IMG/VR virus record: IMGVR_UViG_3300036715_000626
Location: 141,016 to 205,015 of that record
Length of the DNA stretch: 64,000 nucleotides
Direction: 5' to 3' (one strand)
The stretch's first letter is position 1. Each line of letters starts with the position of its first letter. Position numbers and translations under genes: made by a program. The notes below the pieces were generated by a model. That model searched no databases, had not been told where the DNA came from, and saw nothing but the letters and a program-made list of their open reading frames with translations. This document shows, piece by piece, positions 6,892-61,636 of this stretch.

Positions 6892-6907
6892 AGTATTTAT
6901 TCCTTTT

Positions 6908-7237: not shown

Positions 7238-7268
7238 ATGAACTCCTCTCTTATTTGGATCTACTTAT

Positions 7269-7276
7269 ATAATATA
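7269..7276 (-). promoter_or_regulatory. Putative early promoter core TATATTAT
   Basis: Motif about 30 nt upstream of ATG 7237, with a T-tract 7 nt further upstream. Confidence 0.6.
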
Positions 7277-7336
7277 AGGGTGTAAAAAAATAAGAATGTC
7301 TAATAAACTTTCTTGATAATAATATAAAGGACTACT

Positions 7337-7858
7337 ATGCCATACGTAAACTTACGTTTGTCTACTAATTTTACATTAGACGAACTTACTGATTCTGCTA
7401 ACCATCCCGATCTTGTACCTGGTAACAGAGCAGAAATTGCTTCTAAACCAGAGCTAATTAAAAACATAACTGATCTAGCAGTACATGTATTACAACCACT
7501 TCATGATGCGTTATCAAAACATTTTGGTAAAACGGTATCGGTGTTCGTATCGTCTGGATACCGTGGAACCGTTTTAAATGTAAAAGTAGGTGGAAGTCCT
7601 ACTGGAGCACACCCGCGTGGTCACGGAGCTGATATTAATGTACATGAGTTTAGTGTCGATGATTTGTTTCAGTTTATTAAAGATAACTTGAATATCTTTA
7701 ATGGTTGGTTAGATAAATGTATCATCGAGAAAGTTGGTGATAAAGAATGGATACATATTTCTGCAGATATTCCAGAGAATGCTCGATGTGAGTTCTATAC
7801 CACTAATGATGGTAAGAAATATGACCTAGTGTATAAAGGTCTTGTCGCTAAGAAATAA
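7337..7858 (+). CDS. Peptidase M15 family endolysin (Zn D-Ala-D-Ala carboxypeptidase-like)
   Basis: LSTNFTLDEL start, SSGYR, NxxVGG, HxxGxxAD and WIHIS motifs. Confidence 0.88.
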   Translation: MPYVNLRLSTNFTLDELTDSANHPDLVPGNRAEIASKPELIKNITDLAVHVLQPLHDALSKHFGKTVSVFVSSGYRGTVLNVKVGGSPTGAHPRGHGADINVHEFSVDDLFQFIKDNLNIFNGWLDKCIIEKVGDKEWIHISADIPENARCEFYTTNDGKKYDLVYKGLVAKK

Positions 7859-7889
7859 GATACAGTACTCCATATGGAGTACTGTATCT
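7858..7889. terminator. Perfect 32-bp palindrome between convergent genes
   Basis: agatacagtactccat|atggagtactgtatct. Confidence 0.75.
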
Positions 7890-7890
7890 A

Positions 7891-8337: not shown

Positions 8338-8338
8338 A

Positions 8339-8911
8339 TTAAGCTCTTTGTGCTCTGGTTATCCAGCCATCTAAGAATTCTGCTTGAGAGGGGTCGTTGA
8401 TAACTATCTTTTTAACAAAAGATACTCTTGATTTTCTAAGATCGTTAAGGAGACCTACTTGATCAGGATACGCGTTTATTTTCTTAACTGTGTTAGGACC
8501 AATATCACCGTCTACTACAGAGCCTACAAGAATCTGGATAGCTTTAGCTGGATAGCCTTCACCCGAGTTTACTTCCCAATCATAAAGGGTGTTAGCTATG
8601 TCTTGAGATACAATAAGATCGCCACAGATGGTATCCCAGAAGTTAACTTTATAAAAAGCTGTTACTAATTCATCTAGTCTAGGAATTTTAGCTAGATAGG
8701 TATCAATAATTTTCCAGTTATCTTTGGCATGTAGGTCTTGTGGGAAACCAGGTAAAGTTTTAGCTCCGTCTATGAGTACCCAGCCAGACCATTTAGGCCA
8801 GTTAACTCTAGATATACCATCGTAGGTTTCTTTACCTTTATCATTAGGGTTATTAGAATACCCACCTTCATTACCACCTGTTTTCTTTTTAGCTATTACA
8901 AATTCCGCCAT
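8339..8911 (-). CDS. Glycoside hydrolase family 108 lysozyme with peptidoglycan-binding C-terminus
   Basis: EGGYSNNPNDKGKETYDGI, VDGDIGPNT and FLDGWITR motifs. Confidence 0.9.
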   Translation of the reverse strand: MAEFVIAKKKTGGNEGGYSNNPNDKGKETYDGISRVNWPKWSGWVLIDGAKTLPGFPQDLHAKDNWKIIDTYLAKIPRLDELVTAFYKVNFWDTICGDLIVSQDIANTLYDWEVNSGEGYPAKAIQILVGSVVDGDIGPNTVKKINAYPDQVGLLNDLRKSRVSFVKKIVINDPSQAEFLDGWITRAQRA

Positions 8912-47781: not shown

Positions 47782-50151
47782 TTAAACCACCTTTGTTAAT
47801 ATTGTTCGTAAACGTTTGATTCGGTTCTCAGCTTGTACTGCTACCATTTTTTCTTGGATAACTCTAAATGAGTAAGCAGTAGCTACTTTGTTATAATCCA
47901 CGGTCATACTCATTTCAACTTCACTAGCAATATAAGCTTGTTTAATAAGCTGCGTACCACCATCTATCACATGTGCGGTATAAGGTAATACAGTTGCTTC
48001 GATTAGTCCATTGTACATATGCTCAATTGTTTCCCAACCATCGGCAAATGGTGCTAAATAAATATTACTCACCCCAGTGTTACCAGAGGTATTAACCATA
48101 CCACCCGCTAAATAAATACCGGATTTAGTTACAAATAACGCACTGTTTGTTAATAATACTGGAAGATCACTAATCTGAGTTAACGTAATAACACTTCCAG
48201 GCGCTACTGGGTTGTTATCTGTATCTATATCGAAATAGTATACTGAATTAGTTATAGTGGTGCCGTTAGTGTTACCACCTATTAAGTATACTCTATTCTT
48301 AGTTTGAACTATACTGGCTATTACTTTATTAAAAGGTAATATTGCATATAGTGTCCACGAGCTTAACAATCCATTAGCATCGATAGTTGCTTTATACACA
48401 CTGTTAACGGTAGTATAGTTAGACATAGCCCCGCCAACTAAGAATACGTTATTACCAGAAACAAACATTCTAGAATAACCTAAAGCCGCAGGTAATGCAT
48501 TACTGTTAGTAGACCAAGAACCTAAATCTCCTGTAACAGGATCTATTGTAGCACGCATAATACTGTTTACTGCTTGCAAGATTCCGTTAACTGTTTGATC
48601 CCCACCTATAACATAGAGATGAGAATTAGTTATCAATAACTGTGTTTTGGCAATAGCTATAGGCATATTACCATATATTTCGAAACTACTTATAGTTCCG
48701 TCCGAAAGAATGGTAGCTTTTAAGATAGCTGCTAGCGCGGTACTACCATTAGCACCACCCATAATATACACATTATTCTTAATAATAGCTATTCTACCCG
48801 CATACATTGCTATAGGAATAGTTCCGTATAACGTAAAGTCGCCTATAATTCCATTAGTATCAATAGGCGCTGAATAAATAGTGTTTACAGGAACCTCGCT
48901 ACCAGCGCTTCCGCCTACAATGAACGCATGGTTATTAGTAGTAAATGTCGTACCGCCATAAAGATTTGCTGGTAAATTACCGATATCACCCCAAACTAAA
49001 TCAGTTACCGTAGAAGGTTGGTTTTGATTTTCATAATGATAATTGTTAAAGTATTGACCTTTACAATATAAACTGTTAGAACAGTTAATATTAGGATCAA
49101 TATAGGTAACTGTTCCTAAACTACCATCAATAGCTTCCCACCCATTATCCTGGGTGATATCATCAACATATACAGTAGTACCGGTTACATCGCCATAGAC
49201 AGTTACATCAGTAGCCGTGGATGTTAATCTTCTATTAAAGGTTCCTACTTTAGGAGACATCCCAAACACAGCTTTATCTGGTTCGACTGATATGTACACA
49301 GCAGGATCGATAGTGAGATAATTTGTAGCGGTCTTAGCTTTAAGGATAGGTAATGCAAAATATTCTGTTACAACACCAGCTATTACTGGAGATGTTTCAG
49401 TTTTTACTATATCGTATTGACCGTTACCGTTAACAACCACGCTACCTATTTTAACCATTACTTTGACACCATCTACAGTAACTAACGCATTATCGCCAGC
49501 AGTCAATGGCTCAGCAAGTGTGAGCAGTGTATCTGTATCGGTAACTAGTATATTAACAGGGTTAAGCATAAGCTGGCTTCTGTGTGTTACCCAATCTGTA
49601 TCTGTATCTTCTTGGTAATACTGATAAACTGCTATTTCACCATCAGTTGGCGATAGATCGGCGTCTAATCCGTTCTGCCATATCACATAGTCATCCAGAG
49701 TTTCCATCAGTTGTAAATTACGCACGGCGACAGTTGTCACAGTGCTAACTGTTTTACTAGACATCTTAGCCGATATGAACAATGATGTGTCAGTAGTACT
49801 TGTTACTGGGTGAAATACCACTGTCAATACACCATTATAAACAAAACCTGATATAACATCTTCATTCTGGGATTCAACAGTATATGTTATATCGTGTGAG
49901 TAGTTGGTAATAGTCACATTGACGCTACTACCTTCTGAATACTGTAGTGTATATGTAGACAGTGTAGGAGCATCTGTAACGCTAATAACAGAAAAAATAG
50001 CCAATGTTTCATTGACGTCTACATCAGTAATTAATATACCTGGCTTTACAGGAAAGTATAAGGTCTGGTTTGAAAGCATAGATGTTGGTGTTATAACAAT
50101 ATTCTTATCAGTAACAGCATCGTGCATCGGAATATTTGGTAGTGACGGCAT
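47782..50151 (-). CDS. Kelch-like beta-propeller tail/receptor-binding protein (paralog 3)
   Basis: Six Y/FxxGG...IYxAxIDxxGxxxxW repeats inside a scaffold shared with two neighbours. Confidence 0.78.
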   Translation of the reverse strand: MPSLPNIPMHDAVTDKNIVITPTSMLSNQTLYFPVKPGILITDVDVNETLAIFSVISVTDAPTLSTYTLQYSEGSSVNVTITNYSHDITYTVESQNEDVISGFVYNGVLTVVFHPVTSTTDTSLFISAKMSSKTVSTVTTVAVRNLQLMETLDDYVIWQNGLDADLSPTDGEIAVYQYYQEDTDTDWVTHRSQLMLNPVNILVTDTDTLLTLAEPLTAGDNALVTVDGVKVMVKIGSVVVNGNGQYDIVKTETSPVIAGVVTEYFALPILKAKTATNYLTIDPAVYISVEPDKAVFGMSPKVGTFNRRLTSTATDVTVYGDVTGTTVYVDDITQDNGWEAIDGSLGTVTYIDPNINCSNSLYCKGQYFNNYHYENQNQPSTVTDLVWGDIGNLPANLYGGTTFTTNNHAFIVGGSAGSEVPVNTIYSAPIDTNGIIGDFTLYGTIPIAMYAGRIAIIKNNVYIMGGANGSTALAAILKATILSDGTISSFEIYGNMPIAIAKTQLLITNSHLYVIGGDQTVNGILQAVNSIMRATIDPVTGDLGSWSTNSNALPAALGYSRMFVSGNNVFLVGGAMSNYTTVNSVYKATIDANGLLSSWTLYAILPFNKVIASIVQTKNRVYLIGGNTNGTTITNSVYYFDIDTDNNPVAPGSVITLTQISDLPVLLTNSALFVTKSGIYLAGGMVNTSGNTGVSNIYLAPFADGWETIEHMYNGLIEATVLPYTAHVIDGGTQLIKQAYIASEVEMSMTVDYNKVATAYSFRVIQEKMVAVQAENRIKRLRTILTKVV

Positions 50152-52418
50152 TACATACTCCTTTTAGTAAGATATGTTGTGATATTCCGTATAGCTGCTA
50201 ATGCAGTTTGTGGTAATGTAAGGGTTAAGTAGTTTTGTATATATCTAAACGACGGCAACGGCGTTATACTCGTAAAGGATACTTTAATATCTGTATTAGC
50301 ATAGCTAACTGACGCTTTAATATCTTTAACATAAGCAACTGCAGATAAATCATTACTAATACCTGTTCTAGTACTTAGTTCTGGTAGAACATAAGTTTTA
50401 TCAATATTATCAGTAATTACTGGCGTGGTTAATGCTTTCTTAAAACGATATGCTGTTTTACCTGCGGTATTGTCATTAAGACGGCAATCCCAGCCATCTA
50501 CTGTAGCTGAATAGTATTTTTCTAAGGTGTTACCGAAGATATATAATTTATTATTAATAATGAAAGTTTTCATTTTATTATCAGCAGTCCAAACACTCGT
50601 CATTAAGCTGAGATTATCGCTATCTAAAAGAATTGTTGGGGTTGTTAAATATCCGTCGGTATCTACTATAAATTTTATTATTTTAGTATGCCCATTTTCT
50701 ACAGCAGTTGAGTGTGTATGGTTTTGATAATAAACGGGTTTTCTAATAATCATATAGACATAATTACTAGTTACAATTACGTTAACATGTTTAATAGAGT
50801 ATATAGCGTTATTATCTACGAGTTCCATTCCTGAATATATCCAAGAACCTATACTTCCAGAACTATCAATGTCGCTGTAATATAAAAAATAATTTGCAGA
50901 ACCATTTATAATAACTTCAGAACCATCTCCAATAACTGCGTATACTCTGGATTTTGTTTTAAATATGTTATGTACGTAATAGTTATTCTGTCCTGTGAAT
51001 CCTGGTGCTACTACACTACCAACCAGAGCGTCTAAATAACCGTCATTAGTTAAACTGTAAAGACTACCACTCCACCCAGTTCCGTCAGTGTTACCGTAAC
51101 CATAAATGTATAATTTACCTTTAGTTACTACAAATGAAGGATCTGATAAACGTGGTGAAGTATTGTTAATAATCACCCAGCTACCAATATGTCCGTTAAT
51201 ATCGATAACAGCAGAGAGTAAATAACTTAATAACCCACCTGTAGACAATGTTCCTAGCTGACTAGTTATTATGTTGCTACCACCAGTTATATATATTTTA
51301 TCTTTAAGCTGTACAAGCGCCGCTTCATACATAGCTACTGGTAACCCAGACACACCGGTATCTTCTACCCAAGGGGTAGATGGTATAGATCCATCAGGAT
51401 TAAGCTCTTTGTAAAAAGAACGATTTGTAACAGCAGCTATCCATCCTTGTATCGGGTCGGTAAAATAGTTGTATGTATAAATTCCTCTAGTACAACCACC
51501 AAATCTGTATATACGACTACTGGTAACTATAGACATACTGTCAGCATAACCAATATCAGTACTTGACGTTATTGTAGGTAAATTTGGTAACGTTGAATCA
51601 TATGTCACCGGATCTATGGTTTTTAACAAATTAGTATTGTTATAGTTATCATAATGAGTAAATTCACAAGGATAACCTAAAAACGCATTGGTATTGTAAC
51701 TTGAATTATCGTTAACTTTAGCGAGATTTAAATTACCCATTGTGGTGTGTACCGCAACATCAGTTCCTACCGGAATTTGTATAGAGGTATTAACATATGT
51801 AGCATCTTCTGATAAAAACACATTATTAGCAGCCAGTACAACATCATTTTGATAGGTCACCCAATCAGTTTCACCTACTCCTTGAGCAGCTACCGATGTT
51901 TCTACAACACTAGCACTTGAATTCAAATCGGTATCAACTCCATTTTGCCAAGTAACCATATTGTCAGCAACGGCAGGAATAACTAGATTATTAATAACGA
52001 TTACATTTTGGCTACTTTGTATTTTACCAGATTCAGTACATGTGATACTTATAGTTCCAGTGGTATCAGTTCGCACTGGTAAGAATGTTACATGGATAAT
52101 ATCGCCAGCTCTGCTAGTGGTAACTAATCCTGATGTGTTGAATATGCTATATTGATTACCTGGAATATAGTTAGTGATAGTTATGTCGACAGTACTGCCT
52201 TCATAGTACGTAAGTGTGTTTGTATTTACTGTAGGTTCGCCTGTAATTATTCCATAACTAAGAGCTGTTAACATGTCATTGAGATCATCTTGAACTAGCA
52301 TAGTACCAGTTCTAGCAGGTAATTGTAATAGGGTGTCTACTGTAATATCAGTATCTGGTTTCAGTTCTATTTTTTTACCAGTCGAAGAATCGACTAGCTT
52401 TATAGTAGAGTTTGGCAT
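50151..52418 (-). CDS. Kelch-like tail protein (paralog 2)
   Basis: Shared N-terminus (LQLPARTG, YYEGS, WQNG, GETDWV), degenerate Kelch-like repeats and a shared FRxIQ...TYLTKR end. Confidence 0.75.
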   Translation of the reverse strand: MPNSTIKLVDSSTGKKIELKPDTDITVDTLLQLPARTGTMLVQDDLNDMLTALSYGIITGEPTVNTNTLTYYEGSTVDITITNYIPGNQYSIFNTSGLVTTSRAGDIIHVTFLPVRTDTTGTISITCTESGKIQSSQNVIVINNLVIPAVADNMVTWQNGVDTDLNSSASVVETSVAAQGVGETDWVTYQNDVVLAANNVFLSEDATYVNTSIQIPVGTDVAVHTTMGNLNLAKVNDNSSYNTNAFLGYPCEFTHYDNYNNTNLLKTIDPVTYDSTLPNLPTITSSTDIGYADSMSIVTSSRIYRFGGCTRGIYTYNYFTDPIQGWIAAVTNRSFYKELNPDGSIPSTPWVEDTGVSGLPVAMYEAALVQLKDKIYITGGSNIITSQLGTLSTGGLLSYLLSAVIDINGHIGSWVIINNTSPRLSDPSFVVTKGKLYIYGYGNTDGTGWSGSLYSLTNDGYLDALVGSVVAPGFTGQNNYYVHNIFKTKSRVYAVIGDGSEVIINGSANYFLYYSDIDSSGSIGSWIYSGMELVDNNAIYSIKHVNVIVTSNYVYMIIRKPVYYQNHTHSTAVENGHTKIIKFIVDTDGYLTTPTILLDSDNLSLMTSVWTADNKMKTFIINNKLYIFGNTLEKYYSATVDGWDCRLNDNTAGKTAYRFKKALTTPVITDNIDKTYVLPELSTRTGISNDLSAVAYVKDIKASVSYANTDIKVSFTSITPLPSFRYIQNYLTLTLPQTALAAIRNITTYLTKRSM
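51339..51414. repeat. 76-bp direct repeat, copy 1 (73/76 identical to 53551..53626)
   Basis: Direct sequence comparison by eye. Confidence 0.9.
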
Positions 52419-52419
52419 G

Positions 52420-54609
52420 TTAACCTCGTTTTGTTAAATATGTTCTGATTCTAATAATTACACGCACAGCATTTTTAATAATAACGTTATGCTGCATAGC
52501 TCTAAAACTATTGATAGGTTTATAACCTGCATAATTAATTGTAATCGTATTATTAATTTTAAATGCATCAGCCGTGATAGGTGTTACAGTGTCAATAACG
52601 GAATAAATAAATCTGGCACTAAATGTACCTACTATATCCATAGCTGTTTTAACGCTAAGCTTAGGTAATAAGTATATAGTATTAGGCGTATTTGTTAATA
52701 CCGGTAATGTTTCAAGTTTCTTAAACTTATATTGGCTGGTAAGTGCTGTAGTATCGTTTAATCTACTATTCCAACCATCTACTGTTATATGTAAATATTG
52801 ACTCATATGTTCGTCAAATAGTATAAAAGTGTTATTAATAATAAATACACCACTCCACCATTTAACACTTAATGACCATATACTATTAAATGGTATTGTA
52901 GTAAGTGTACCTAACATGATATTGGTCCCCAGGATTCCATTACTATCAATACTCGACCTACTTAATTTAGTGTAACCGCCATTCGCATCGTGTATTATAA
53001 AATAAACATAATTATTAAATACTAAAGTAGCTAACCCGAAACTACCAGTAGCATACCCAGTAGTACCATAAACACTTGCTGTACCTAATGGTTGTGAAAT
53101 CCACGCACCTATACTCCCATCAGAATTAATTACAGCATAGTAACCATCTGTTATGTATAGTCTAGATTTAGTTTTGAATAAGTAACCTTTCGATTGACTA
53201 CCTGTGTTAGGTAATGTAATAGCGACAAATGATCCCAAGGTACCATCAGTGTTGATATCAAATTTAAAACCCACTCTAGTACTAGAAATAAAGTTACCGG
53301 GAAAAGCTATCAATAACCCAGATAGATACATTTTATTCTTAGTAATAACTATACTAGGTTCTGATATATTAGGAGATACTCCGCTAGAAACCCATGCGCC
53401 AACATGACCGTTAATATCAATAGGAGCTTTATAAATAGTGTTATTAATACCACCACCTGTATAATTTCCTGATGATGTAGTAAAATTATTGCCACCAACC
53501 AAATAAACAGTGTTTTTTAACACTATTAAGCCGAACCCATTTAGTCCTGTTGGTAACCCAGACACACCGGTATCTTCCATCCAAGAGGTAGATGGTATAG
53601 ATCCATCAGGATTAAGCTCTTTGTAATAGGATTTATTTATAGAAGCGCCGACACCGTTAAACACATAGGTATACCCACCAAACTTATATATCCTACTTGA
53701 TGTAATAATAGACCCTGGATTAGCCCATAACGCATTATCTTGTGTATAATATGAATCGCTAGTATTATTAACTGGCGCTGTTAAAATAGCATTATCATAA
53801 TTAACTGGGTCTATAGTTTTTAGTAGGTTATTATTCCAGTAATTGTCGTAATGACTAAATTCGCACGGATACCCTATATATGCTCCAGTAGTAGCATTTA
53901 CGACATCTCCTACCTTAACCACACCAGTATCTACTACAAGCAAATCGTCACCGTTAACAACTGGATCAGTTACAGTTATATAAACGCCATCATCTGCCGT
54001 GAATATATTGTCGCCGGCAATCATTTCTAGTTTATCAGTATACATAACCCAATCAGTCTCGCCATCACCTTGTAACGCAATACCCGTTGAGATTACATCT
54101 AGACCGGATCCTAGATTGGCGCTTGTACCATTCTGCCACATAACTAAATCGTCGGTAACTTCGGCTATATTCATATTGGTAATCGCTACCATAGTTTTAT
54201 AACTTTCAAGTTTACCAGGAGCTGTCATTTTAACAACTAAGTTACAGCTAATATCGATATTTGTAGGAAGAAACGTCAAATAAATATTAGCTCCAGTTCT
54301 CGATACTTGAACGATCCCAGTAGTATCAGCATAAATATTAAAAGTATTGGCAGCATCATAGTTACTAATGGTTACTATAGCTACACTTCCTTCATATTGC
54401 GAAAGAGTTGCTACCGATAGTATAGGTCCAGCAGTTACCATGTTATTATTAAAAGAAGAAATAGCTGCCGTTAAATCGGCTCTTGTTAAGAGTATCCCGT
54501 TTCGAGTAGGCAGCCGTAATGTTAAATCGTTTGGTACTTGATCTGGTAACTGTATCTCCAATAGTTTACCATTTATTTTATTCCGAAAAGTTATTGATTT
54601 AGAAGCCAT
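52420..54609 (-). CDS. Kelch-like tail protein (paralog 1)
   Basis: Same scaffold; GYPCEF.HYDNY and YKELNPDGSIPST segments are shared with paralog 2. Confidence 0.75.
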   Translation of the reverse strand: MASKSITFRNKINGKLLEIQLPDQVPNDLTLRLPTRNGILLTRADLTAAISSFNNNMVTAGPILSVATLSQYEGSVAIVTISNYDAANTFNIYADTTGIVQVSRTGANIYLTFLPTNIDISCNLVVKMTAPGKLESYKTMVAITNMNIAEVTDDLVMWQNGTSANLGSGLDVISTGIALQGDGETDWVMYTDKLEMIAGDNIFTADDGVYITVTDPVVNGDDLLVVDTGVVKVGDVVNATTGAYIGYPCEFSHYDNYWNNNLLKTIDPVNYDNAILTAPVNNTSDSYYTQDNALWANPGSIITSSRIYKFGGYTYVFNGVGASINKSYYKELNPDGSIPSTSWMEDTGVSGLPTGLNGFGLIVLKNTVYLVGGNNFTTSSGNYTGGGINNTIYKAPIDINGHVGAWVSSGVSPNISEPSIVITKNKMYLSGLLIAFPGNFISSTRVGFKFDINTDGTLGSFVAITLPNTGSQSKGYLFKTKSRLYITDGYYAVINSDGSIGAWISQPLGTASVYGTTGYATGSFGLATLVFNNYVYFIIHDANGGYTKLSRSSIDSNGILGTNIMLGTLTTIPFNSIWSLSVKWWSGVFIINNTFILFDEHMSQYLHITVDGWNSRLNDTTALTSQYKFKKLETLPVLTNTPNTIYLLPKLSVKTAMDIVGTFSARFIYSVIDTVTPITADAFKINNTITINYAGYKPINSFRAMQHNVIIKNAVRVIIRIRTYLTKRG
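53551..53626. repeat. 76-bp direct repeat, copy 2
   Basis: tggtaacccagacacaccggtatcttc...ggtagatggtatagatccatcaggattaagctctttgtaa. Confidence 0.9.
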
Positions 54610-54663: not shown

Positions 54664-54698
54664 TAACAGTACTACCGACATAGTCGGTAGTACTGTTA
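54664..54698 (-). terminator. Hairpin closing the signalling cassette
   Basis: 16-bp stem taacagtactaccgac-ata-gtcggtagtactgtta overlapping the porin stop. Confidence 0.75.
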
Positions 54699-55886
54699 GA
54701 AATCTGAATACCATTGTAGCATAATAGAACTTGATGATGTAACACTATCTTTAATAGTATCATTATTACCATATTCAGGAGTAAATCCTTTATAAGTACT
54801 AACTCCATCGGAATCATAATGACAGTATCTTAGTTTAAGTAGGTTATCTTTATTTAGCGATACTCCTATACTGGCGTTAATAGTTGTTCCTATATCAGCA
54901 TACGACAACAGCGATATCGGTTTACCGGCTAATAAACTATGGTATCCAGGAGATTTGTAAGCGTACTCGATTCCGAATGACATATCCTTATTCCAGATGA
55001 CGTCATCTACTTCTTTTTTAAATCCAGCAGTTATACTATAACCAGCTGTGTCATAACCACCAAAGTAATAGCCGTCATCTTCAAAAGGTTTCTTAGTAGG
55101 AGAGAGTTGTTCATTGTCACCAGATGATTTAGTTAATACCACACTACCATAATAAGTAAATCCAGTATTCTCTTCGTCACTATATGTAAAAGCTCCTCCA
55201 AGTATATCTGAAGCTATAATAGGGTTACTATTGATAACTTGTTCTATCTTGTAATAGTTAACTTCTAAATACAGATTATCCAACTGATGTTTATCTATAA
55301 TAAAATAACCACCGGTATTTTTATAACTATCGTAGGAAACCGGACCGCTACTAGCATCATAATCGTAGAATGATTTAAAATATTTATCAAAGTTTATCTT
55401 ACCACCGCTTAAAGTATGTTCCTTAGTTGGTTTATAGGTAAGTATGATTCCTTGCATTGTTACATCGTTTACATTATACAATCCGTTACCTAAACGAGTA
55501 CCATTATATGCCATTTCATAAAGAGTGCCTTTTCTAAAAGGAAACAAACCAACTGACACAGAAACATCTTTAAAGATGTTATATGTATAATACAGTTCAT
55601 TCAGATAGATAGCTTTCATCTTAGTGACATCATCTTTAACAATGCTGTTGTATACAGAATTATCTGTATAATATATACCTGGTGAAAAAGTAAACTTACT
55701 ATTACAAAAGTAGAAATCGTTATTAACAACAACGTCTACTGTATCAATATGCGAAGATATGTTCTTCCCATTCTCTTTATAAGTAGATAACGCGCTTGTT
55801 AGCTCTGCATTACCAGACATGTCGTATTTGAAATCAACAGGGTATAAAAAAGAGAAACATAAAACCATAAAAACGATGAACTTCAT
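54696..55886 (-). CDS. Outer-membrane beta-barrel protein / putative porin (DUF3373-like)
   Basis: Signal peptide, alternating aromatic/polar strands, IYLNELYYTY...VSVG.FP and SFGIEYAYKS.GY motifs, and a C-terminal Phe signature (MLQWYSDF). Confidence 0.78.
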   Translation of the reverse strand: MKFIVFMVLCFSFLYPVDFKYDMSGNAELTSALSTYKENGKNISSHIDTVDVVVNNDFYFCNSKFTFSPGIYYTDNSVYNSIVKDDVTKMKAIYLNELYYTYNIFKDVSVSVGLFPFRKGTLYEMAYNGTRLGNGLYNVNDVTMQGIILTYKPTKEHTLSGGKINFDKYFKSFYDYDASSGPVSYDSYKNTGGYFIIDKHQLDNLYLEVNYYKIEQVINSNPIIASDILGGAFTYSDEENTGFTYYGSVVLTKSSGDNEQLSPTKKPFEDDGYYFGGYDTAGYSITAGFKKEVDDVIWNKDMSFGIEYAYKSPGYHSLLAGKPISLLSYADIGTTINASIGVSLNKDNLLKLRYCHYDSDGVSTYKGFTPEYGNNDTIKDSVTSSSSIMLQWYSDF

Positions 55887-56173
55887 CGTGGATCCTCCAA
55901 GTCGGTATTTTCAAAACTTCTATAACTAACAGAGGTTACTTCTTTATCGATACACTCTTTTAGTAGATGTTTATCTTTCACAGATAAGGGTAATTTTGTA
56001 TACAATTGTAATTTATTATTATTATAGGCCCGTAACCAGCCTTTCGGCTTTTTTATATTCATGTCAATACCGTATTTATTAAATACATTTTCGCAGTATT
56101 GTTCTGGTTGGTCTGGGTATATGTTAGTTGCTATTAAACAGTTAAAAAATAATAATAGGATAAATTTATTCAT
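55883..56173 (-). CDS. Small exported (periplasmic) protein
   Basis: Signal peptide MNKFILLLFFNCLIA, two mature Cys, ATGA-coupled to the porin gene. Confidence 0.7.
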   Translation of the reverse strand: MNKFILLLFFNCLIATNIYPDQPEQYCENVFNKYGIDMNIKKPKGWLRAYNNNKLQLYTKLPLSVKDKHLLKECIDKEVTSVSYRSFENTDLEDPR

Positions 56174-56193: not shown

Positions 56194-57594
56194 TTAATCA
56201 TCGCGTCTCGGTTTAACAGGAATAGTTATTTTGAACAACGTCCCATCTTTAGACGTATTTATCAGCTTAACATCCCCACCGGAATTAACAGCGATTCCTT
56301 TTGTAAATGATAGACCAGCTCCTCTTGGGACAATACTGTCCTTAAGTATACCAATCTTAACCATGAATTTAAGGAACCAAGATCTATTATTAATATTTTC
56401 ACCTTGCATAGTTTTAGTAGTATACCCATAGCTAAATATTTCATTTGTTTCTACTATATTACCAGCTCTATCTCTGATACCTCTACCGTTATCGGAGAAA
56501 TAAATATTAAGTTTATACTTACTTGGTAATAACTCAGCTCCGATAGTGATGACCGTAGCTTTAGCTTCTATACTATTAGTAGTATGAGCATGTATTATAT
56601 TTAATAGATCGCCATTAGTCATACCATAACCGACAGCATAATTCTTTAATATATCGAGGTTATTATAAACCACGGTTACTTTATTAACCTTCAAACTGTT
56701 GTTTGTTTTTATAATATTATCTATAATACTATGTATCGCTGTATTACCGTTACTGTATTTTATATGTTTACTGGCAGCCATTTGATTTAATGGTGCTTCT
56801 AAACGTTCTATAGCAAACTTCATCTTTAAGAAATAGTTCTTAGCTATATCGTCATTAATTAGATCTTTATTGCGTAAAACACAATCAGCACATTTTGTAG
56901 TATCTACATCAGTTTCAGAGGTGCATAGATTACATATCCCGGACTTACTATATGAACATGGGAATAGTGTAGAATATAAGTCCCATACTAATGTTTTAAT
57001 AAGAGCTACTGGCATACCCATTTCATGGTGCGCAGATTCTGACATATCTCTCTGTAGTTTATTTTCTAATCCTATCTTATACGACGTTTTCTCAATAGCG
57101 GCATTACGGTTTTCTATGTATAGCTGTTTAAGAAATATGTAGCTATACAATAAAAAAAATATGAACGAGTTTAAATACATAATATTAAGAAATGTATCTA
57201 TGTAACGCTTATCGTTAACAACGATCGTATGATCATTATATCTAAGTACGGTCTTAAGATCAGCAGTAAAACTTCCCAAATATTTAGCCTGATCTGGTTG
57301 AGCAGGAGTTAATAATAAATACCCATCTTTACCTAAGATGTAATTCATATTACCATCTGTAATAGTTTCACATGACACTACACTACACATAAGACTAAGG
57401 TCTTCTCCTTCTCTACTTACAATAGTAGAGAGCTTCTTAATATAATCAGTCATAGTTCCTTTATAAATAGAATGCACTGTAGATACTTCTATTATTAGGA
57501 AAATTATAAAAAACATTATATAGTACTTAATAAATTTATATATTGTTTTGCTATTAAAAAACAGCATGAACTTATCAATGTCTATTTGTAACAT
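56194..57594 (-). CDS. Membrane-bound sensor histidine kinase
   Basis: Two TM helices flank a ~95-aa periplasmic domain. H-box ESAHHEMGMPV, N-box NIIHAHTTNSIEA, G1 FSDNGRGI, F-box IFSYGYTTK and G2 RGAGLS...GGDV...GTLFKITIP are all present. Confidence 0.93.
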   Translation of the reverse strand: MLQIDIDKFMLFFNSKTIYKFIKYYIMFFIIFLIIEVSTVHSIYKGTMTDYIKKLSTIVSREGEDLSLMCSVVSCETITDGNMNYILGKDGYLLLTPAQPDQAKYLGSFTADLKTVLRYNDHTIVVNDKRYIDTFLNIMYLNSFIFFLLYSYIFLKQLYIENRNAAIEKTSYKIGLENKLQRDMSESAHHEMGMPVALIKTLVWDLYSTLFPCSYSKSGICNLCTSETDVDTTKCADCVLRNKDLINDDIAKNYFLKMKFAIERLEAPLNQMAASKHIKYSNGNTAIHSIIDNIIKTNNSLKVNKVTVVYNNLDILKNYAVGYGMTNGDLLNIIHAHTTNSIEAKATVITIGAELLPSKYKLNIYFSDNGRGIRDRAGNIVETNEIFSYGYTTKTMQGENINNRSWFLKFMVKIGILKDSIVPRGAGLSFTKGIAVNSGGDVKLINTSKDGTLFKITIPVKPRRDD

Positions 57595-57598: not shown

Positions 57599-58228
57599 TT
57601 ACTCGTACAAGAAACTGTTTATACGGGATACTCTATCAGAGTTTTTATTCATATAGTAGTTGTTAATATTTAAACCGGTTACTGTTTCAAATTTATTAAT
57701 ATAATACATAATATCCGCATTGCGGCGGTTCATGGTATGCGCAGTACTAAATAGTATTTTAGCATTAGGGTTCTTATCTAGAATAAGAATAGCGATGTCC
57801 ACACCATCGAATTCTACATAAGCTCCATCTTGCAGCTTAACGATATAACCAAGTGTTATATCTAAGATAGCGTAATCGACTTTACCATTTTCAATACTAC
57901 AATACTTATGTGCCATTAACCCTGCTCTAGGATCAAGACATTTAACCAAAGTGAAATCGTTTAAAACATCCTTCTGGTACAAACGTTTTATATTTTTAAA
58001 ATCTACTGAATAAAGTATGTATGTTTCTGGAATATCATCCATAATAAATAGATATGGTTTGTCACAGCCTACACAAGATACTTCTGCTGAGGGAACACTA
58101 GTATAGTCAATAGTTGTATCATATACTGTTTTAGCATGTGTTTCTGTTATAGCTTCCAGTACTGGAGATATAGCCGAAGTATTATCTTTCTTAAATAGTC
58201 TGGTTAATAGCTTTATATATTTTAGCAT
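57599..58228 (-). CDS. Stand-alone response regulator receiver (CheY-like) protein
   Basis: LFIMDD acidic pair, phosphoacceptor in DYAILDITL, FDGVDIA, ILFSTAH and YMNK; no DNA-binding output domain. Confidence 0.88.
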   Translation of the reverse strand: MLKYIKLLTRLFKKDNTSAISPVLEAITETHAKTVYDTTIDYTSVPSAEVSCVGCDKPYLFIMDDIPETYILYSVDFKNIKRLYQKDVLNDFTLVKCLDPRAGLMAHKYCSIENGKVDYAILDITLGYIVKLQDGAYVEFDGVDIAILILDKNPNAKILFSTAHTMNRRNADIMYYINKFETVTGLNINNYYMNKNSDRVSRINSFLYE

Positions 58229-58229
58229 T

Positions 58230-58670
58230 TTAGTTTCCTGTAAAGATTGATCGAATCATATCTAGTATTTCTTTTGTCAATGTTGGATTTATGTAATGTA
58301 TACCTACCAATATAACTATTAAAATACCGATAGAAATTATAATTTTACCGCTATCCGGAAAATCACTAAAAAACCCTTTACTAGGTTTAACAACAACAGG
58401 TGCAGCTTCAGAATTAACATTCTTTTTTAAACTAGAAAGCATTTCAATGTTAGCATCTATTAATTTATTTAAAGTTACTATTTGACTAAACTTCATAGTT
58501 TGCATAGAGGATTTATAATTACTATGTAACAATATTAATGTTTCGAATACTTCATCAGTTACATCTTTTAATTGTACTAAACGTGTAAAGTCATCATTGT
58601 TATCATTTTCAATATGAGTGTCATATATTTCATCTTTTAGAGCAAGCAATCTTTTTTCTACATTATCCAT
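58230..58670 (-). CDS. Helical protein with C-terminal transmembrane anchor
   Basis: About 105-aa helical N-domain, then IIISIGILIVILVGIHYI; AGGGAG RBS; stop 1 nt from the receiver start. Confidence 0.7.
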   Translation of the reverse strand: MDNVEKRLLALKDEIYDTHIENDNNDDFTRLVQLKDVTDEVFETLILLHSNYKSSMQTMKFSQIVTLNKLIDANIEMLSSLKKNVNSEAAPVVVKPSKGFFSDFPDSGKIIISIGILIVILVGIHYINPTLTKEILDMIRSIFTGN

Positions 58671-58719
58671 CTTTTTCTCCCTTAAAATCGTTAAATAATC
58701 AATAAATACTCAAAGATTA

Positions 58720-58750
58720 ATACAACACATAGCATAGCTATGTGTTGTAT
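58720..58750 (-). terminator. Hairpin upstream of the signalling cassette
   Basis: 14-bp stem atacaacacatagc-ata-gctatgtgttgtat; no clear U-tract, so read-through is possible. Confidence 0.6.
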
Positions 58751-58756
58751 CATATG

Positions 58757-59062
58757 TTATTTAGTAACGGTTTTCTCGATGTTAGATAAAACATTTGTTA
58801 TTGGGTTATCCGTACTAGCACTTGTTGATGTGTAGAATCCGTACGCTGCTGCTAGTGCTGCACATATTGTACCATAGAGTACATTGGTTGCTCCGTCTGG
58901 TTTACCCCATGCAAATATCATAACAATACCAATAGTAGATATTACCCATGTTACAAGGATAGTTAAAAGGACTGCTTTTCTAAATCGTGTAGGTTCACCT
59001 TCAGTCCATAGTATAAACTTACGAACATAGGTATTTTCGTTTTTAATAGTTTCTTCTTCCAC
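58757..59062 (-). CDS. Holin-like two-TM membrane protein
   Basis: 101 aa, GTG start with AAGGA RBS; RFRK, then TM1, a short turn, TM2 ending AYGFY, and a polar tail. Confidence 0.55.
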   Translation of the reverse strand: MEEETIKNENTYVRKFILWTEGEPTRFRKAVLLTILVTWVISTIGIVMIFAWGKPDGATNVLYGTICAALAAAYGFYTSTSASTDNPITNVLSNIEKTVTK

Positions 59063-59112
59063 ACAGTATCCTTAATTTTAAAATAATCACTAAAGATCAA
59101 AAAAATAACCTA

Positions 59113-59138
59113 GTATGAAGGTCATATGACCTTCATAC
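59113..59138 (-). terminator. Perfect 26-bp palindrome overlapping a stop codon
   Basis: gtatgaaggtcat|atgaccttcatac with an A-tract at 59099-59105. Confidence 0.7.
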
Positions 59139-59625
59139 CATTTTTAAGATTAAAGATCATGATTAGCGCATTATTAATCACGATCTCTATTACAGGGGGT
59201 TTCCCGAAGTCATAATCGACTAACTCTTTCTCCGGTACTTGTTTAGAACCCGTATTAATCGGGATCGTGTACATACCGGGATACTCACCTCTGGTAATGC
59301 TACCATTGGCAAGATATAGAACATTTATACCATCAGTGTATAAATCATTCTCTTCGGTGATTTTAATAACATCATTACTAGCACTACTAGTAAAATGTTC
59401 TATAAGTTCCCCTAAGTGACCTATTCGGTAAATATCGTGGTTAAAGATATTTTCATCTTTAGCTAAACGCTTACCGGAATTAATATAAAACAAAATACTA
59501 CCAACACTTCCATAACGTGCTGTATACAAATTGGTATAGAACACCGATCCAAAGATACGATGTTCTACTTGCTTAATTAGGACAATACTGTCTATCTTAT
59601 TTTGTTCTACTACAAATATGGACAT
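59122..59625 (-). CDS. Hypothetical protein
   Basis: Start reassigned to ATG 59625 (MSIFVVEQ) behind GAAGGAGG; a CATATTAT variant lies at 59656-59663. Confidence 0.65.
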   Translation of the reverse strand: MSIFVVEQNKIDSIVLIKQVEHRIFGSVFYTNLYTARYGSVGSILFYINSGKRLAKDENIFNHDIYRIGHLGELIEHFTSSASNDVIKITEENDLYTDGINVLYLANGSITRGEYPGMYTIPINTGSKQVPEKELVDYDFGKPPVIEIVINNALIMIFNLKNGMKVI

Positions 59626-59687: not shown

Positions 59688-59715
59688 AGTAGTAACCGTA
59701 TATACGGTTACTACT
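59688..59715 (-). terminator. Perfect 28-bp palindrome
   Basis: agtagtaaccgtat|atacggttactact with an A-tract at 59669-59676. Confidence 0.75.
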
Positions 59716-61228
59716 TAGTACGCACCATTTTAGGATAATCCATAAGAATATATGTTTTTGCTTTAGGCTTAATAATCTTCGTTCGATCATGATGCATTTT
59801 AACTTGTTTAGGTATATCCTTAGAATAAAGATAACCATAGTATACTTCACGACCATCATCAAGTTTTCTTAACCTTCCAACATTTTGCAAGTTAGCTTGG
59901 ATACTACTTATTAAAACTGTTTGTAATACAGCAATAAGATTAGGTATATCAAGAGCCGTACCAGCACTTAGAGTAGTACTAAAACAGATATCACTTTCTA
60001 ATACGTTTACTAACGGGTCATCTTCCACATATCTTCGTACGTCAAATTGTTTATACTTACGATTAAAATGATTTGCTAGGACAGTACACATACGTATAGA
60101 CGCTGCGAAAATCAGAATCCGATCGCCCGGTTTCCTACGACTAATATATAAGTCCGCTATATAGTAATCGATCATGTTAATATACTCTCGCAAGAATACA
60201 CTATTGCGCATAAGCGTTTGTTCGAATAAGATATGGTTATAACCCTTAACCCCCATGAACCTAATTCCGCGTAACGATTCAATCTTATAGTTAATAGCAA
60301 TAACGTTAGCATATTTATCATACTCTACGATATTACTTATACGATTTGTAGCAGGAAATAGATTCATATACATTTTATTCACATCTGGTTGATTACTAAG
60401 TAACGTTGCAGATGAACCTATAAGGTATAATGGGTTAAGATATAAAATACATTTGAAGATACTATAAAATTCTTCATGAGTCTCATCATTATAGATAATG
60501 CCTATACCAAGAGTTTCAAGTATCTTATCGGGAGTTATCGGAAAAGTATAGCTATGACATTCCTCAAAATCGGTAATAAGATTCATCATGGTTCTACTAC
60601 TAAAAATAACAAACTTATACGAAGTATTTTTATCTTCAATAAGATGTAATAAACTTTCTTCACCCTGTACGATATAAATATCGTTATCAGTTACATCAGT
60701 ATACTTCTTAAGATCGATTATCCATTTCTCGATATACTTAGGTCTTAATAATAGACCTGTTCGCATATTGAGTTTAGCAACGGCAGCCATCGCTATGACC
60801 GATTTACCGCGACCTGTCTGTAGGTCAATAAGTGTTATTTTAGTGGCGTTTTCAGCTACTAATGCGTTTATATAAATATGTTGATAATCTCTAATAGTAA
60901 AAGACGAGTTAACTTTAATGTTAATGGGTTTAATATTAAAATTCTTACGATATTCCACATGTATCATATCTCTAGTGACATAATGGCTACCAAGTAACAG
61001 CATGAAATCTTTTAAATTCATTATACTGAATCTATACGTATTGGTATGTGGTAAATGTGACATGAATATCTTATCACGCTGTCGTATATTTCGTTTAAGT
61101 ATTTTATCATATACAAAATCATAAGTAGACAATTCGTTTATCATAATGTTTAAAACACTATTCAGTTTTTCATCAAGCAGCTTAACGGTGAATGATGTGT
61201 TAAATATTACTATTTCTAAGCGTTTCAT
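59711..61228 (-). CDS. Superfamily 2 helicase (phiKZ gp75-like)
   Basis: IRDYQ Q-motif, LQTGRGKS, DETH, SAT, SAGTALDIPNL and QNVGRLR. Confidence 0.88.
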   Translation of the reverse strand: MKRLEIVIFNTSFTVKLLDEKLNSVLNIMINELSTYDFVYDKILKRNIRQRDKIFMSHLPHTNTYRFSIMNLKDFMLLLGSHYVTRDMIHVEYRKNFNIKPINIKVNSSFTIRDYQHIYINALVAENATKITLIDLQTGRGKSVIAMAAVAKLNMRTGLLLRPKYIEKWIIDLKKYTDVTDNDIYIVQGEESLLHLIEDKNTSYKFVIFSSRTMMNLITDFEECHSYTFPITPDKILETLGIGIIYNDETHEEFYSIFKCILYLNPLYLIGSSATLLSNQPDVNKMYMNLFPATNRISNIVEYDKYANVIAINYKIESLRGIRFMGVKGYNHILFEQTLMRNSVFLREYINMIDYYIADLYISRRKPGDRILIFAASIRMCTVLANHFNRKYKQFDVRRYVEDDPLVNVLESDICFSTTLSAGTALDIPNLIAVLQTVLISSIQANLQNVGRLRKLDDGREVYYGYLYSKDIPKQVKMHHDRTKIIKPKAKTYILMDYPKMVRTK

Positions 61229-61251: not shown

Positions 61252-61273
61252 TAAGCGGGGAAATTCCCGCTTA
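61252..61273 (-). terminator. Short GC-rich hairpin
   Basis: taagcggg-gaaatt-cccgctta with an A-tract at 61242-61247. Confidence 0.6.
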
Positions 61274-61636
61274 TGGTGTTAGTAGCATCTGTATTAATGC
61301 TACTAATAATAGTGTATTACACACAGCTATAGTATACATAAGTGTGTATACCACTATCAAATAAACATCGAGTGTTTTGTAGGGTTTCCAGAACAATGCA
61401 GTTAAAAACAATATCATAAGTGCTATTCCGAATATAACTAAATACATGGATATATCCGTGTACTGGTTAAAAACATAACCAAGGTAATGCATACAGTACC
61501 ATACAATACCCCAATTAAAACTATTTATTATTACCATCCCGATATTGTAAAAAGTTACATATTGGATTAGTCTAACTAATTTCCAATTAGTACCTAACGA
61601 CATGACATCAAGATGCAAAAGTCTATTTATAAACAA
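61271..61636 (-). CDS. Three-TM membrane protein
   Basis: Hydrophobic 121-aa ORF with TTG start and AAGGAG RBS. Confidence 0.65.
   Translation of the reverse strand: MFINRLLHLDVMSLGTNWKLVRLIQYVTFYNIGMVIINSFNWGIVWYCMHYLGYVFNQYTDISMYLVIFGIALMILFLTALFWKPYKTLDVYLIVVYTLMYTIAVCNTLLLVALIQMLLTP

What the first reader, a model, noticed from the sequence alone, without database searches (positions are those of the whole stretch)
57599..59062. Receiver without an output domain next to holin-like and TM-anchored proteins: possible phosphorylation-controlled lysis timing
Seen: the receiver has no DNA-binding or enzymatic domain. It has a ~55-aa N-terminal extension starting with a basic amphipathic helix (MLKYIKLLTRLFKK) and containing CVGC. 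The two upstream genes are a single-TM helical protein and a 2-TM holin-like protein. No TATATTAT early motif precedes the cassette, and it abuts tail genes. Known: stand-alone CheY-like receivers act by protein binding, and T4 lysis inhibition uses a small periplasmic antiholin to relay superinfection signals to a holin. Inference: the output may be post-translational at the membrane, gating lysis. Cross-talk with host chemotaxis or motility is an alternative.
Basis: inference. Interest (0 to 1): 0.72.

Follow-up and report, generated by a model that had tools for sequence, protein, structure and literature searches.

The report
Jumbo-phage two-component signalling operon
An uncultured 205-kb jumbo phage carries its own membrane sensor kinase and a stand-alone phospho-receiver, always paired with a small tail-anchored membrane protein and, in several related phages, sitting right behind the cell-wall-degrading lysis enzymes, so the phage may sense the cell envelope and use phosphorylation to control a membrane step such as lysis.

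Summary
The anatomy is real. ORF 57599-58228(-) is a genuine stand-alone receiver: a confident model matches solved receivers at Z 11-12.7. The DD/D/T/K phospho-acceptor residues are kept in 84-99% of 161 family representatives, and none has an output domain.

The unit is a tight five-gene operon bounded by hairpins:
- tail-anchored p146
- receiver
- kinase
- secreted p96
- porin-like outer-membrane barrel

The p146-receiver-kinase triad is present in all 24 related phage loci examined. The family has about 300 clusters, and none was found in 185,579 cellular species genomes.

The 2-TM "holin-like" ORF (59062-58757) is not a conserved partner. It occurs only in the closest relative, is bracketed by hairpins and matches no holin family. 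This genome's endolysins lie 47-50 kb away.

However, in at least seven related lineages, endolysin-type M15 peptidases lie within about 1.5 kb upstream of p146, directly adjacent in four of them. Phosphorylation-controlled lysis therefore stays plausible, with p146 as the candidate membrane target. The lysis role is inferred, not shown.

I found no published complete phage-encoded kinase-receiver pair.

The parts
57599..58228 (-). Stand-alone receiver (REC), 209 aa. Residues 1-14 form a basic amphipathic helix, 15-40 are disordered and variable, and 41-58 are a conserved lead-in. Residues 59-209 are a (beta-alpha)5 receiver with a beta-hairpin insert (126-141) between beta3 and alpha3. The phospho-acceptor is D123, with D64/D65, T162 and K195 completing the site.
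   Evidence: AF2 model. Foldseek and VIA hits to receivers. Alignments A1 and the 161-representative set. No Pfam PF00072 hit.
56194..57594 (-). Sensor histidine kinase, 466 aa. It has TM1 (~15-40), a periplasmic alpha/beta sensor domain (~45-126, with a conserved C70/C75 pair) and TM2 (~129-155). The DHp domain carries H190 (SESAHHEMGMP) and a Cys-rich insert at 211-245. The CA domain has N340, D368-x-G370-x-G372 and G425-x-G427. The gene starts 4 nt after the receiver stop codon.
   Evidence: HATPase_c match. Alignment A2 invariant residues. Profile hits to solved histidine kinases. AF2 model and Foldseek hits to sensor kinases. Junction sequence.
58230..58670 (-). p146, a tail-anchored membrane protein. 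It has a ~105-aa helical N-terminal (cytoplasmic) domain, one TM (~109-127) and a ~20-aa tail. Its stop codon is 1 nt before the receiver ATG, and a strong Shine-Dalgarno sequence (AAGGGAG) lies upstream. It belongs to no known family and is the candidate output partner.
   Evidence: A homologue of the same architecture lies directly upstream of the receiver in all 24 loci. No consistent Pfam or PHROG family. Junction sequences.
55883..56173 (-). p96, a small secreted (periplasmic) protein with a signal peptide. Homologues have co-varying Cys pairs, either four Cys or two. Its stop codon overlaps the porin start (ATGA).
   Evidence: Alignment of 11 homologues. ORF coordinates. Synteny.
54696..55886 (-). 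Porin-like outer-membrane beta-barrel, 396 aa, with a signal peptide and a C-terminal ...YSDF.
   Evidence: ESM Atlas structure search: TM 0.76 to the DUF3373 family (commonest in Campylobacterota) and 0.62-0.70 to porin families. Feature score 0.97 to porins. Conserved downstream of p96 in about 13 loci.
54664..54698 (-). Intrinsic-terminator-like hairpin (16-bp stem followed by a T-run) that closes the five-gene operon.
58720..58750 (.). Perfect 14-bp-stem palindrome between the 2-TM ORF and p146. It separates the 2-TM gene from the cassette.
58757..59062 (-). Small protein (101 aa, GTG start) with two hydrophobic TM-like segments read from the sequence. It is a lineage-specific insertion of unknown function.
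   Evidence: 51% identity to L005:7191-7466 only. Absent from other relatives. Only weak matches: phrog_1544 at E 0.002, and DUF6450-like by language-model features alone.
59111..59140 (-). Terminator-like hairpin (13-bp stem followed by a T-run). It overlaps the stop codon of the upstream 167-aa gene (59125-59625).
7337..7858 (+). Peptidase_M15_3 endolysin-type gene of this genome, about 50 kb from the cassette. Its homologues sit next to the cassette in relatives.
8339..8911 (-). GH108 + PG_binding_3 endolysin. The adjacent gene, 7891-8337(-), belongs to the same family (phrog_1128) as relatives' genes that match Pfam Peptidase_C92. Homologues of that gene also neighbour the cassette in relatives.

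Best explanation
The receiver is the response-regulator half of a phage-encoded two-component system.

Shown by sequence, fold and synteny:
- The genes p146, receiver, kinase, p96 and porin form a tight, hairpin-bounded operon.
- The kinase is a canonical 2-TM sensor histidine kinase with a periplasmic input domain and intact H, N, G1 and G2 boxes.
- The receiver keeps the full phospho-acceptor site and never carries an output domain.
- The triad of tail-anchored protein, receiver and kinase is universal in a large, phage-only family.

Inferred mechanism:
1. A periplasmic or envelope signal sets kinase activity. The signal may reach the kinase through the phage-made porin and the disulfide-bonded p96.
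2. The kinase phosphorylates D123 of the receiver.
3. The receiver is held at the inner membrane by its N-terminal basic amphipathic helix.
4. The phosphorylated receiver acts by binding a protein. The most likely target is the ~105-aa cytoplasmic domain of the tightly juxtaposed tail-anchored protein p146.

In several related lineages the same cassette directly follows endolysin-type peptidases, a C92 amidase-like gene and secreted nucleases. The output I consider most likely is therefore control of an envelope or lysis step, either timing or inhibition, with p146 acting as a holin- or antiholin-like membrane component. The 2-TM ORF at 59062-58757 is not part of the conserved system.
For: Receiver identity:
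- AF2 model pLDDT 86.
- Foldseek top 50 hits are all receivers, or constructs that contain one.
- VIA Z 11-12.7.
- D64, D65, D123, T162 and K195 lie at the ends of beta1, beta3, beta4 and beta5. They are kept in 84-99% of 161 representatives.

Kinase identity.

Operon structure:
- 1-nt and 4-nt spacers and an ATGA overlap.
- Flanking hairpins.

Conservation:
- Cassette synteny holds in about 20 distinct loci down to 25-30% identity.
- The triad is present in all 24 loci examined, including distant ones.
- The family has 306 clusters, all short.
- No member was found in 185,579 species genomes.

Amphipathic helix: conserved in most members.

Lysis linkage:
- M15 endolysin-type genes lie directly or closely upstream in L010, L011, L012, L013, L017, L026 and L038.
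- C92-like genes lie nearby in L009, L011, L017 and L022.
- Secreted nucleases lie nearby in L012, L022 and L026.
- These lysis-linked contexts are scattered over the whole receiver tree.
Against: - No phosphotransfer, binding or lysis assay exists.
- The complex prediction for receiver + p146 gave no answer (score 0.08).
- p146 matches no holin family and lacks a strongly charged tail.
- In this genome, and in its own sub-clade (L001, L003, L005, L019, L024), the cassette follows the RNA polymerase, helicase and p160 genes, not lysis genes. Here the endolysins are 47-50 kb away.
- Gene neighbourhood in phages can reflect shared timing or shared envelope location rather than a shared pathway.
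- The Pfam Response_reg model does not reach significance on this protein.
- No transcript data are available. Only DNA metagenomes hold the region.
Confidence: 0.5

Rival explanations
1. One reading: the phosphorylated receiver gates the 2-TM protein at 59062-58757, which is the phage holin.
For: The gene is real, with 51% identity to the L005 homologue. It has two TM segments. It lies 87 bp upstream of p146 on the same strand.
Against: It is found only in the closest relative. It is absent or replaced in L001 and L003, absent from every other locus fetched, and undetectable in five related IMG/VR records, two of them over 200 kb. It is bracketed by terminator-like hairpins. It has no holin family hit. 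It is not adjacent to an endolysin.
Confidence: 0.06
2. CheY mimic: the stand-alone receiver docks on the host flagellar switch or chemotaxis proteins and alters the motility of the infected cell.
For: It is a single-domain receiver. CheY structures, including Helicobacter pylori CheY, are among the good structural matches (Z ~11). The probable hosts are motile Campylobacterota (weak evidence).
Against: It has its own transmembrane sensor kinase, not a CheA. There are no che genes in the cassette. The neighbours conserved across all 24 loci are p146 and the kinase, and many loci also carry other envelope proteins. CheY is no better a match than Spo0F, PorX or ComE receivers.
Confidence: 0.08
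3. Phosphorelay or phosphate sink: the receiver acts like Spo0F. It passes phosphate to, or drains it from, host Hpt proteins, kinases or regulators to reprogram host transcription.
For: Spo0F is among the best structural matches (TM by target 0.70-0.72). There is no output domain.
Against: The genome has no Hpt domain. The only conserved His of p146 is replaced by Y or T in relatives, so p146 is not an Hpt. The receiver family is absent from cellular genomes, and the kinase family has only phage-type relatives at E<=1e-3. Both point to an insulated, phage-specific pair.
Confidence: 0.1
4. An envelope-sensing system unrelated to lysis. The kinase and receiver monitor the periplasm or outer membrane, and p146 carries out superinfection exclusion, envelope remodelling or control of uptake through the phage porin.
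For: A porin-like barrel and the periplasmic p96 belong to the operon in about 13 loci. Secreted nucleases lie nearby in some relatives. In this genome the cassette is far from the lysis genes.
Against: Recurrent direct adjacency to endolysin-type genes across deep branches of the family. The porin and p96 are dispensable in several lineages, whereas p146 is not.
Confidence: 0.22

Closest known systems
Classical bacterial two-component systems with single-domain response regulators (CheY, Spo0F, DivK/CpdR type)
   Same: A membrane sensor histidine kinase with DHp and CA domains, plus a stand-alone (beta-alpha)5 receiver with the DD/D/T/K pocket. The two genes are adjacent and tightly spaced. 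Output is by protein binding.
   Different: It is encoded by a lytic-type jumbo phage and confined to phage contigs. The receiver is too divergent for the Pfam model. The receiver has a 32-147-aa N-terminal extension with an amphipathic helix and a beta-hairpin insert after beta3. It always has a tail-anchored membrane protein partner gene. The kinase has a Cys-rich insert at the tip of the DHp hairpin.
Clostridioides difficile phage phiCDHM1 agr genes (AgrC histidine kinase, AgrB, AgrD; PMC3901668)
   Same: A phage genome carrying a sensor histidine kinase, presumed to let the phage take part in signalling.
   Different: Going by that paper's abstract and my own recall, phiCDHM1 is a phage of a Gram-positive host whose kinase is a recognisable host-derived AgrC with no response regulator. 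Here a complete kinase-receiver pair, with no close cellular relatives, sits in a phiKZ-like jumbo phage of a diderm host together with envelope proteins.
T4 lysis inhibition (holin T, antiholins RI and RIII) - from established knowledge
   Same: The concept is shared. An envelope or periplasmic signal is relayed post-translationally to a membrane lysis protein. A cytoplasmic factor (RIII) binds the cytoplasmic domain of a single-TM holin.
   Different: There is no sequence or fold relationship. Signal relay here would be by His-Asp phosphotransfer. p146 has the opposite topology to T: a large cytoplasmic N-domain and a short periplasmic tail. The lysis function of p146 is not shown.
cREC domains of jumbo phages (Iyer et al. 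2021, PMC7824862)
   Same: A divergent receiver-fold domain found in jumbo phages.
   Different: According to the paper, cREC is never associated with histidine kinases and is linked to NAD/ADP-ribose enzymes. The present receiver is always next to a histidine kinase and keeps the classical pocket.
Phage-encoded porins and outer-membrane proteins (for example the Lc porin of phage PA-2 and lambda Lom) - from memory
   Same: A phage-encoded outer-membrane beta-barrel.
   Different: Those are lysogenic-conversion genes of temperate phages with no associated kinase. Here the barrel is co-operonic with a sensor kinase and a small periplasmic protein.

Membership tests
Receiver (REC, CheY-like) domain | (beta-alpha)5 Rossmann-like fold superposable on solved receivers | tested here: met
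   AF2 pLDDT 86. Foldseek probability 1.00 to receivers, TM by target up to 0.72. VIA Z 11-12.7, rmsd 2.3-2.9 A, covering whole receiver chains.
Receiver (REC, CheY-like) domain | Conserved quintet: acidic pair after beta1, phospho-acceptor Asp after beta3, Thr/Ser after beta4, Lys after beta5 | tested here: met
   D64/D65, D123, T162 and K195 sit at those strand ends. They are kept in 94, 99, 99, 84 and 94% of 161 representatives.
Receiver (REC, CheY-like) domain | Match to Pfam PF00072 above the gathering score | tested here: not met
   No hit at E<=0.1 on the protein. No hit in the whole genome at E<=1. The best profile-to-PDB hit to a receiver is E 0.49. The family is a sequence outlier.
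Receiver (REC, CheY-like) domain | Phosphorylation of the conserved Asp | not testable with these tools
   Needs a biochemical assay.
Two-component system (cognate kinase-regulator pair) | Histidine kinase with H-box His and N, G1, G2 ATP-binding boxes | tested here: met
   H190, N340, D368/G370/G372 and G425/G427 are invariant in 27 sequences. HATPase_c match. Solved kinases are hit by profile and by fold.
Two-component system (cognate kinase-regulator pair) | Conserved operonic pairing of kinase and receiver | tested here: met
   A 4-nt spacer in this genome. The genes are adjacent in every locus with sequence downstream of the receiver.
Holin (claimed for 59062-58757) | Small membrane protein with at least one TM | tested here: met
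   Two hydrophobic segments, read from the sequence.
Holin (claimed for 59062-58757) | Membership of a described holin family, or adjacency to the endolysin | tested here: not met
   No Pfam or PHROG holin hit. No tblastn match in GenBank phages. The endolysins are at 7337-8911, 50 kb away.
   Present only in L005.
Holin (considered for p146, 58670-58230) | Small membrane protein encoded next to the endolysin | tested here: inconclusive
   Met in relatives: L011, L013, L017 and L038 directly, and L010, L012 and L026 within about 1.5 kb. Not met in this genome.
Holin (considered for p146, 58670-58230) | Membership of a described holin family; hole formation | tested here: not met
   No consistent family. 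One of 19 members has a noise-level hit to Phage_holin_5_2 at E 0.022. Hole formation cannot be tested here.
Hpt phosphotransfer protein (considered for p146) | Invariant phospho-accepting His in a helical bundle | tested here: not met
   H50 of the LLHSNYK motif is Y or T in several homologues. Only E43 and L47 are invariant. No PF01627 match in the genome.
CheY of the chemotaxis pathway | Partnership with CheA and che genes; binding to FliM | tested here: not met
   The partner is a 2-TM sensor kinase and there are no che genes nearby. FliM binding cannot be tested here.
cREC of jumbo phages (PMC7824862) | Never linked to histidine kinases; linked to NAD/ADP-ribose enzymes | tested here: not met
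   The receiver here is always linked to a histidine kinase.

The most novel reading that the evidence does not exclude
A phage-borne sensory pathway spans the whole envelope: porin-like barrel, periplasmic p96, sensor kinase, stand-alone receiver and tail-anchored p146. It would set the time of lysis by His-Asp phosphotransfer. That would be a lysis-inhibition-type decision carried out by a virus-encoded two-component system, widespread in uncultured phiKZ-like jumbo phages.
Probability: 0.25. Interest if true: 0.85.

Novelty: new variant of a known kind. Interest (0 to 1): 0.7.

Why it matters
Two-component systems are the main bacterial sensing device, but I found no published description of a complete kinase-receiver pair encoded by a phage. 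The nearest case is the lone AgrC kinase of phiCDHM1.

This system is not a one-off capture. It defines a family of about 300 clusters restricted to phage contigs, with its own obligate membrane partner.

If it controls lysis or another envelope step, lytic jumbo phages would read the state of the periplasm or the environment with their own sensor and act post-translationally. It would also provide a compact, testable module of five genes. Each step can be tested with standard phospho-dead and phospho-mimic mutants in surrogate hosts.

Tried and rejected
- **Hpt idea for p146.** A conserved-looking His in LLHSNYK suggested an HK, REC, Hpt relay. Rejected: the His is Y or T in relatives, and the genome has no Hpt domain.
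- **Receiver + p146 complex prediction.** Score 0.08, so no answer either way.
- **DUF6450 lead for the 2-TM protein.** It came from language-model features, was not confirmed by the Pfam model, and has no literature.
- **Searches of GenBank phages.** Nucleotide and protein searches with the receiver, kinase and 2-TM protein found nothing. Only the RNA polymerase fragment matches, to phiKZ-like jumbo phages at under 30% identity.
- **Search of 185,579 species genomes for the receiver.** Nothing found.
- **Expression data.** Only DNA metagenomes from microbial mat and sediment hold the region, so no reads were laid.
- **CVGC motif.** Not conserved.
- **TATATTAT as a promoter motif.** Not enriched.
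- **Other families and paralogues.** No reverse transcriptase. No paralogues of any cassette gene in this genome. No PF00959, PF01510, PF00182 or PF13539 lysozyme or peptidase genes. The only SLT domain lies in an 1805-aa open frame, which I take to be a virion protein rather than the endolysin.
- **p146 against Pfam, PHROGs and the ESM Atlas.** No informative match.
Full report
**Setting.**
- The window is the last 64 kb of a 205,015-bp IMG/VR virus record with direct terminal repeats.
- Its 670-aa RNA polymerase fragment matches the split polymerase subunits of phiKZ-like jumbo phages of Burkholderia, Ralstonia, Erwinia and Pseudomonas at under 30% identity. It is therefore a distant, uncultured jumbo phage.
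- The region is held only by microbial-mat and sediment DNA metagenomes.
- One homologue comes from a bin labelled Arcobacter, and the phage porin resembles a family commonest in Campylobacterota. Both are weak host hints.

**The observation.**
- On the minus strand the finding covers three ORFs: 59062-58757 (101 aa, two hydrophobic segments), 58670-58230 (146 aa, one C-terminal TM) and 58228-57599 (209 aa).
- The 209-aa protein has no Pfam, PHROG or NCBIfam hit. The Response_reg model finds nothing in the whole genome.
- It is nevertheless a receiver:
  - With a 22-sequence alignment, AlphaFold gives pLDDT 86. The model shows five strands and five helices from residue ~59.
  - Every top Foldseek hit in the PDB and Swiss-Prot libraries is a receiver or a construct that contains one.
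  - VIA-align gives Z 11-12.7 and rmsd 2.3-2.9 A over 113-124 residues, covering whole receiver chains.
  - D64/D65, D123, T162 and K195 lie at the C-terminal ends of beta1, beta3, beta4 and beta5. They are kept in 94, 99, 99, 84 and 94% of 161 representatives.
- An exhaustive profile search finds 306 clusters. Those examined (the 150 listed by the search, and the 161 aligned) are 133-309 aa long, with at most 41 residues after the receiver and an N-terminal extension of 32-147 residues. The family never has an output domain.
- The basic amphipathic N-terminal helix is real: hydrophobic moment 0.75, net charge +5. It recurs in most homologues. CVGC does not recur.

- Four nucleotides after the receiver stop codon begins a 466-aa sensor histidine kinase.
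- It has two TM helices around a ~90-aa periplasmic alpha/beta domain, then a DHp domain with H190 and a CA domain.
- H190, N340, the D368-G370-G372 box and the G425-G427 box are invariant in 27 sequences.
- Solved sensor kinases are hit both by profile and by fold. It is the only HATPase_c gene in the genome.
- Next come a 96-aa secreted protein and a 396-aa protein that overlaps it by ATGA. Cysteines in the secreted protein co-vary as two pairs across homologues.
- The 396-aa protein has a signal peptide and a C-terminal ...YSDF. Its Atlas model aligns to DUF3373 and porin barrels at TM 0.62-0.76.
- The p146 stop codon is 1 nt from the receiver ATG. p146 has a strong Shine-Dalgarno sequence, and a 14-bp palindrome lies upstream of it. 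A 16-bp hairpin plus T-run follows the porin gene.
- The unit is therefore a five-gene operon: p146, receiver, kinase, p96 and porin.

**Conservation.**
- tblastn of the window's proteins against 35 fetched loci shows the cassette order conserved in about 20 distinct phage contigs, down to 25-30% identity.
- In all 24 non-redundant loci, including four chosen from the distant end of the family, the receiver is preceded by a 104-182-aa protein with a single TM near its C-terminus. It is followed by a 2-TM kinase. About 13 loci also carry p96 and the barrel.
- No relative exists in one genome each of 185,579 prokaryotic species.
- The kinase search returned only same-architecture relatives.

**The 'holin-like' gene.**
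- The 2-TM ORF is a real gene, 51% identical to a 91-aa ORF in the closest relative, L005.
- It occurs nowhere else:
  - L001 has an HD-domain gene in its place.
  - L003 has nothing there.
  - No other fetched locus has it.
  - Five related IMG/VR records, two of them over 200 kb, give no match.
- It is bracketed by two hairpins: a terminator-like one after the preceding gene, and the palindrome before p146.
- It hits no holin family.
- This genome's endolysin-type genes lie at 7337-8911, 47-50 kb away: a GH108 + PG_binding_3 protein and a Peptidase_M15_3 protein.

**An unexpected link to lysis.**
- When I searched the window's lysis proteins against the relatives' loci, their homologues turned up beside the cassette. 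Pfam and PHROGs confirm them.
- Peptidase_M15_3 or M15_4 'endolysin' genes lie:
  - directly upstream of p146 in L011 and L017, on the same strand with gaps of 23-29 bp
  - one small ORF, or a few hundred bp, upstream in L013 and L038
  - divergently adjacent in L010, which has two such genes
  - within about 1.5 kb in L012 and L026
- Homologues of the window's gene 7891-8337 (phrog_1128) adjoin the cassette in L009, L011, L017 and L022. The L011 homologue matches Pfam Peptidase_C92, a permuted papain-like amidase family, just below its cut-off.
- Signal-peptide-bearing nucleases (Endonuclease_NS, SNase) lie between the hydrolase gene and p146 in L012, L026 and L022.
- On a receiver tree these lysis-linked contexts are scattered from the deepest branch to the window's nearest neighbours. 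The alternative context, RNA polymerase, helicase and p160 followed by the cassette, is the one seen in the window.
- The cassette is thus repeatedly embedded in an envelope-acting module. The gene that directly follows the endolysin in the tightest arrangements is the tail-anchored p146.

**Mechanism.**
- Shown: the parts list, their intact catalytic motifs, their order and their conservation.
- Inferred:
  - The kinase reads a periplasmic or envelope cue, possibly delivered through the phage barrel and p96.
  - It phosphorylates D123.
  - The receiver has no effector domain and sits at the membrane through its amphipathic helix, so it acts by binding a protein.
- p146 is the best candidate partner, because it is the only other universally co-inherited, tightly juxtaposed gene and it exposes ~105 cytoplasmic residues.
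- That p146 is a holin- or antiholin-like lysis component follows only from its recurrent position after endolysins. It matches no known family.
- The complex prediction was uninformative.
- p146 is not an Hpt protein. Its one conserved-looking His is replaced in relatives, and the genome has no Hpt domain.

**Comparison with known systems.**
- The system works like a classical two-component system with a single-domain regulator, and it meets the fold and active-site tests for that family. It fails the Pfam sequence threshold.
- I found no paper describing a phage-encoded kinase-receiver pair.
- The jumbo-phage review describes only cREC domains, which it says are never linked to kinases.
- Phage phiCDHM1 carries an AgrC kinase among its agr genes (PMC3901668). 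From my own recall it has no response regulator.
- T4 lysis inhibition is a functional analogy only.

**Verdict.**
- The proposed holin is not the partner.
- The idea of phosphorylation-controlled lysis survives in a modified form, with moderate comparative support and no direct evidence.

Noticed in passing
window 47782-54609 (-): The three consecutive large proteins (789, 755 and 729 aa) are paralogues, 37% and 26% identical to the 729-aa one. They carry Kelch/beta-propeller repeats. The N-terminal ~90 aa of the 729-aa protein matches the 770-aa protein that follows the cassette in L001, where a diversity-generating retroelement (bAvd + reverse transcriptase) lies next to it. This genome has no reverse transcriptase.
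   Followed up: partly
L005:3955-6522 and L003:4684-6936, compared with window 59711-61228: The helicase next to the cassette is 505 aa here but 855 and 750 aa in two relatives. The extra ~250-350 aa sit right after the Walker A motif and give a faint LAGLIDADG hit, which looks like an intein that this phage lacks.
   Followed up: no
window 56194-57594 (-), protein residues 70-75 and 211-245: The kinase has a nearly invariant periplasmic Cys pair (C70, C75). It also has a conserved Cys-rich insert (C213, C221, C235 and a neighbouring Cys) at the tip of the DHp hairpin. This could be a metal or redox site, and it is unusual for histidine kinases.
   Followed up: no
L012:3421-4092, L026:2617-3423, L022:1935-2402: Signal-peptide-bearing nucleases (Endonuclease_NS or SNase) are encoded between the endolysin/amidase gene and p146 in several relatives. 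The module therefore also exports a nuclease.
   Followed up: partly
window 5905-8911: This is the genome's lysis region. It holds a GH108 + PG_binding_3 endolysin (8339-8911, -), a phrog_1128 protein related to Peptidase_C92-like genes (7891-8337, -) and a Peptidase_M15_3 gene (7337-7858, +). It also has a 109-aa signal-peptide protein (6908-7237, -) and a 57-aa ORF with two hydrophobic stretches (5905-6078, +). The last two could be the real spanin or holin candidates.
   Followed up: partly
window 61271-61636 (-): A 121-aa ORF with several hydrophobic stretches (TTG start) lies between the RNA polymerase fragment and the helicase. It is conserved in L005 (120 aa).
   Followed up: no
window 55883-56173 (-) and homologues: In the p96 family, Cys residues are lost in pairs. 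Most members have four, while the window, L005 and L032 have two. This fits two disulfides and a periplasmic location.
   Followed up: partly
By this count it is not a demonstrated motif.
   Followed up: yes
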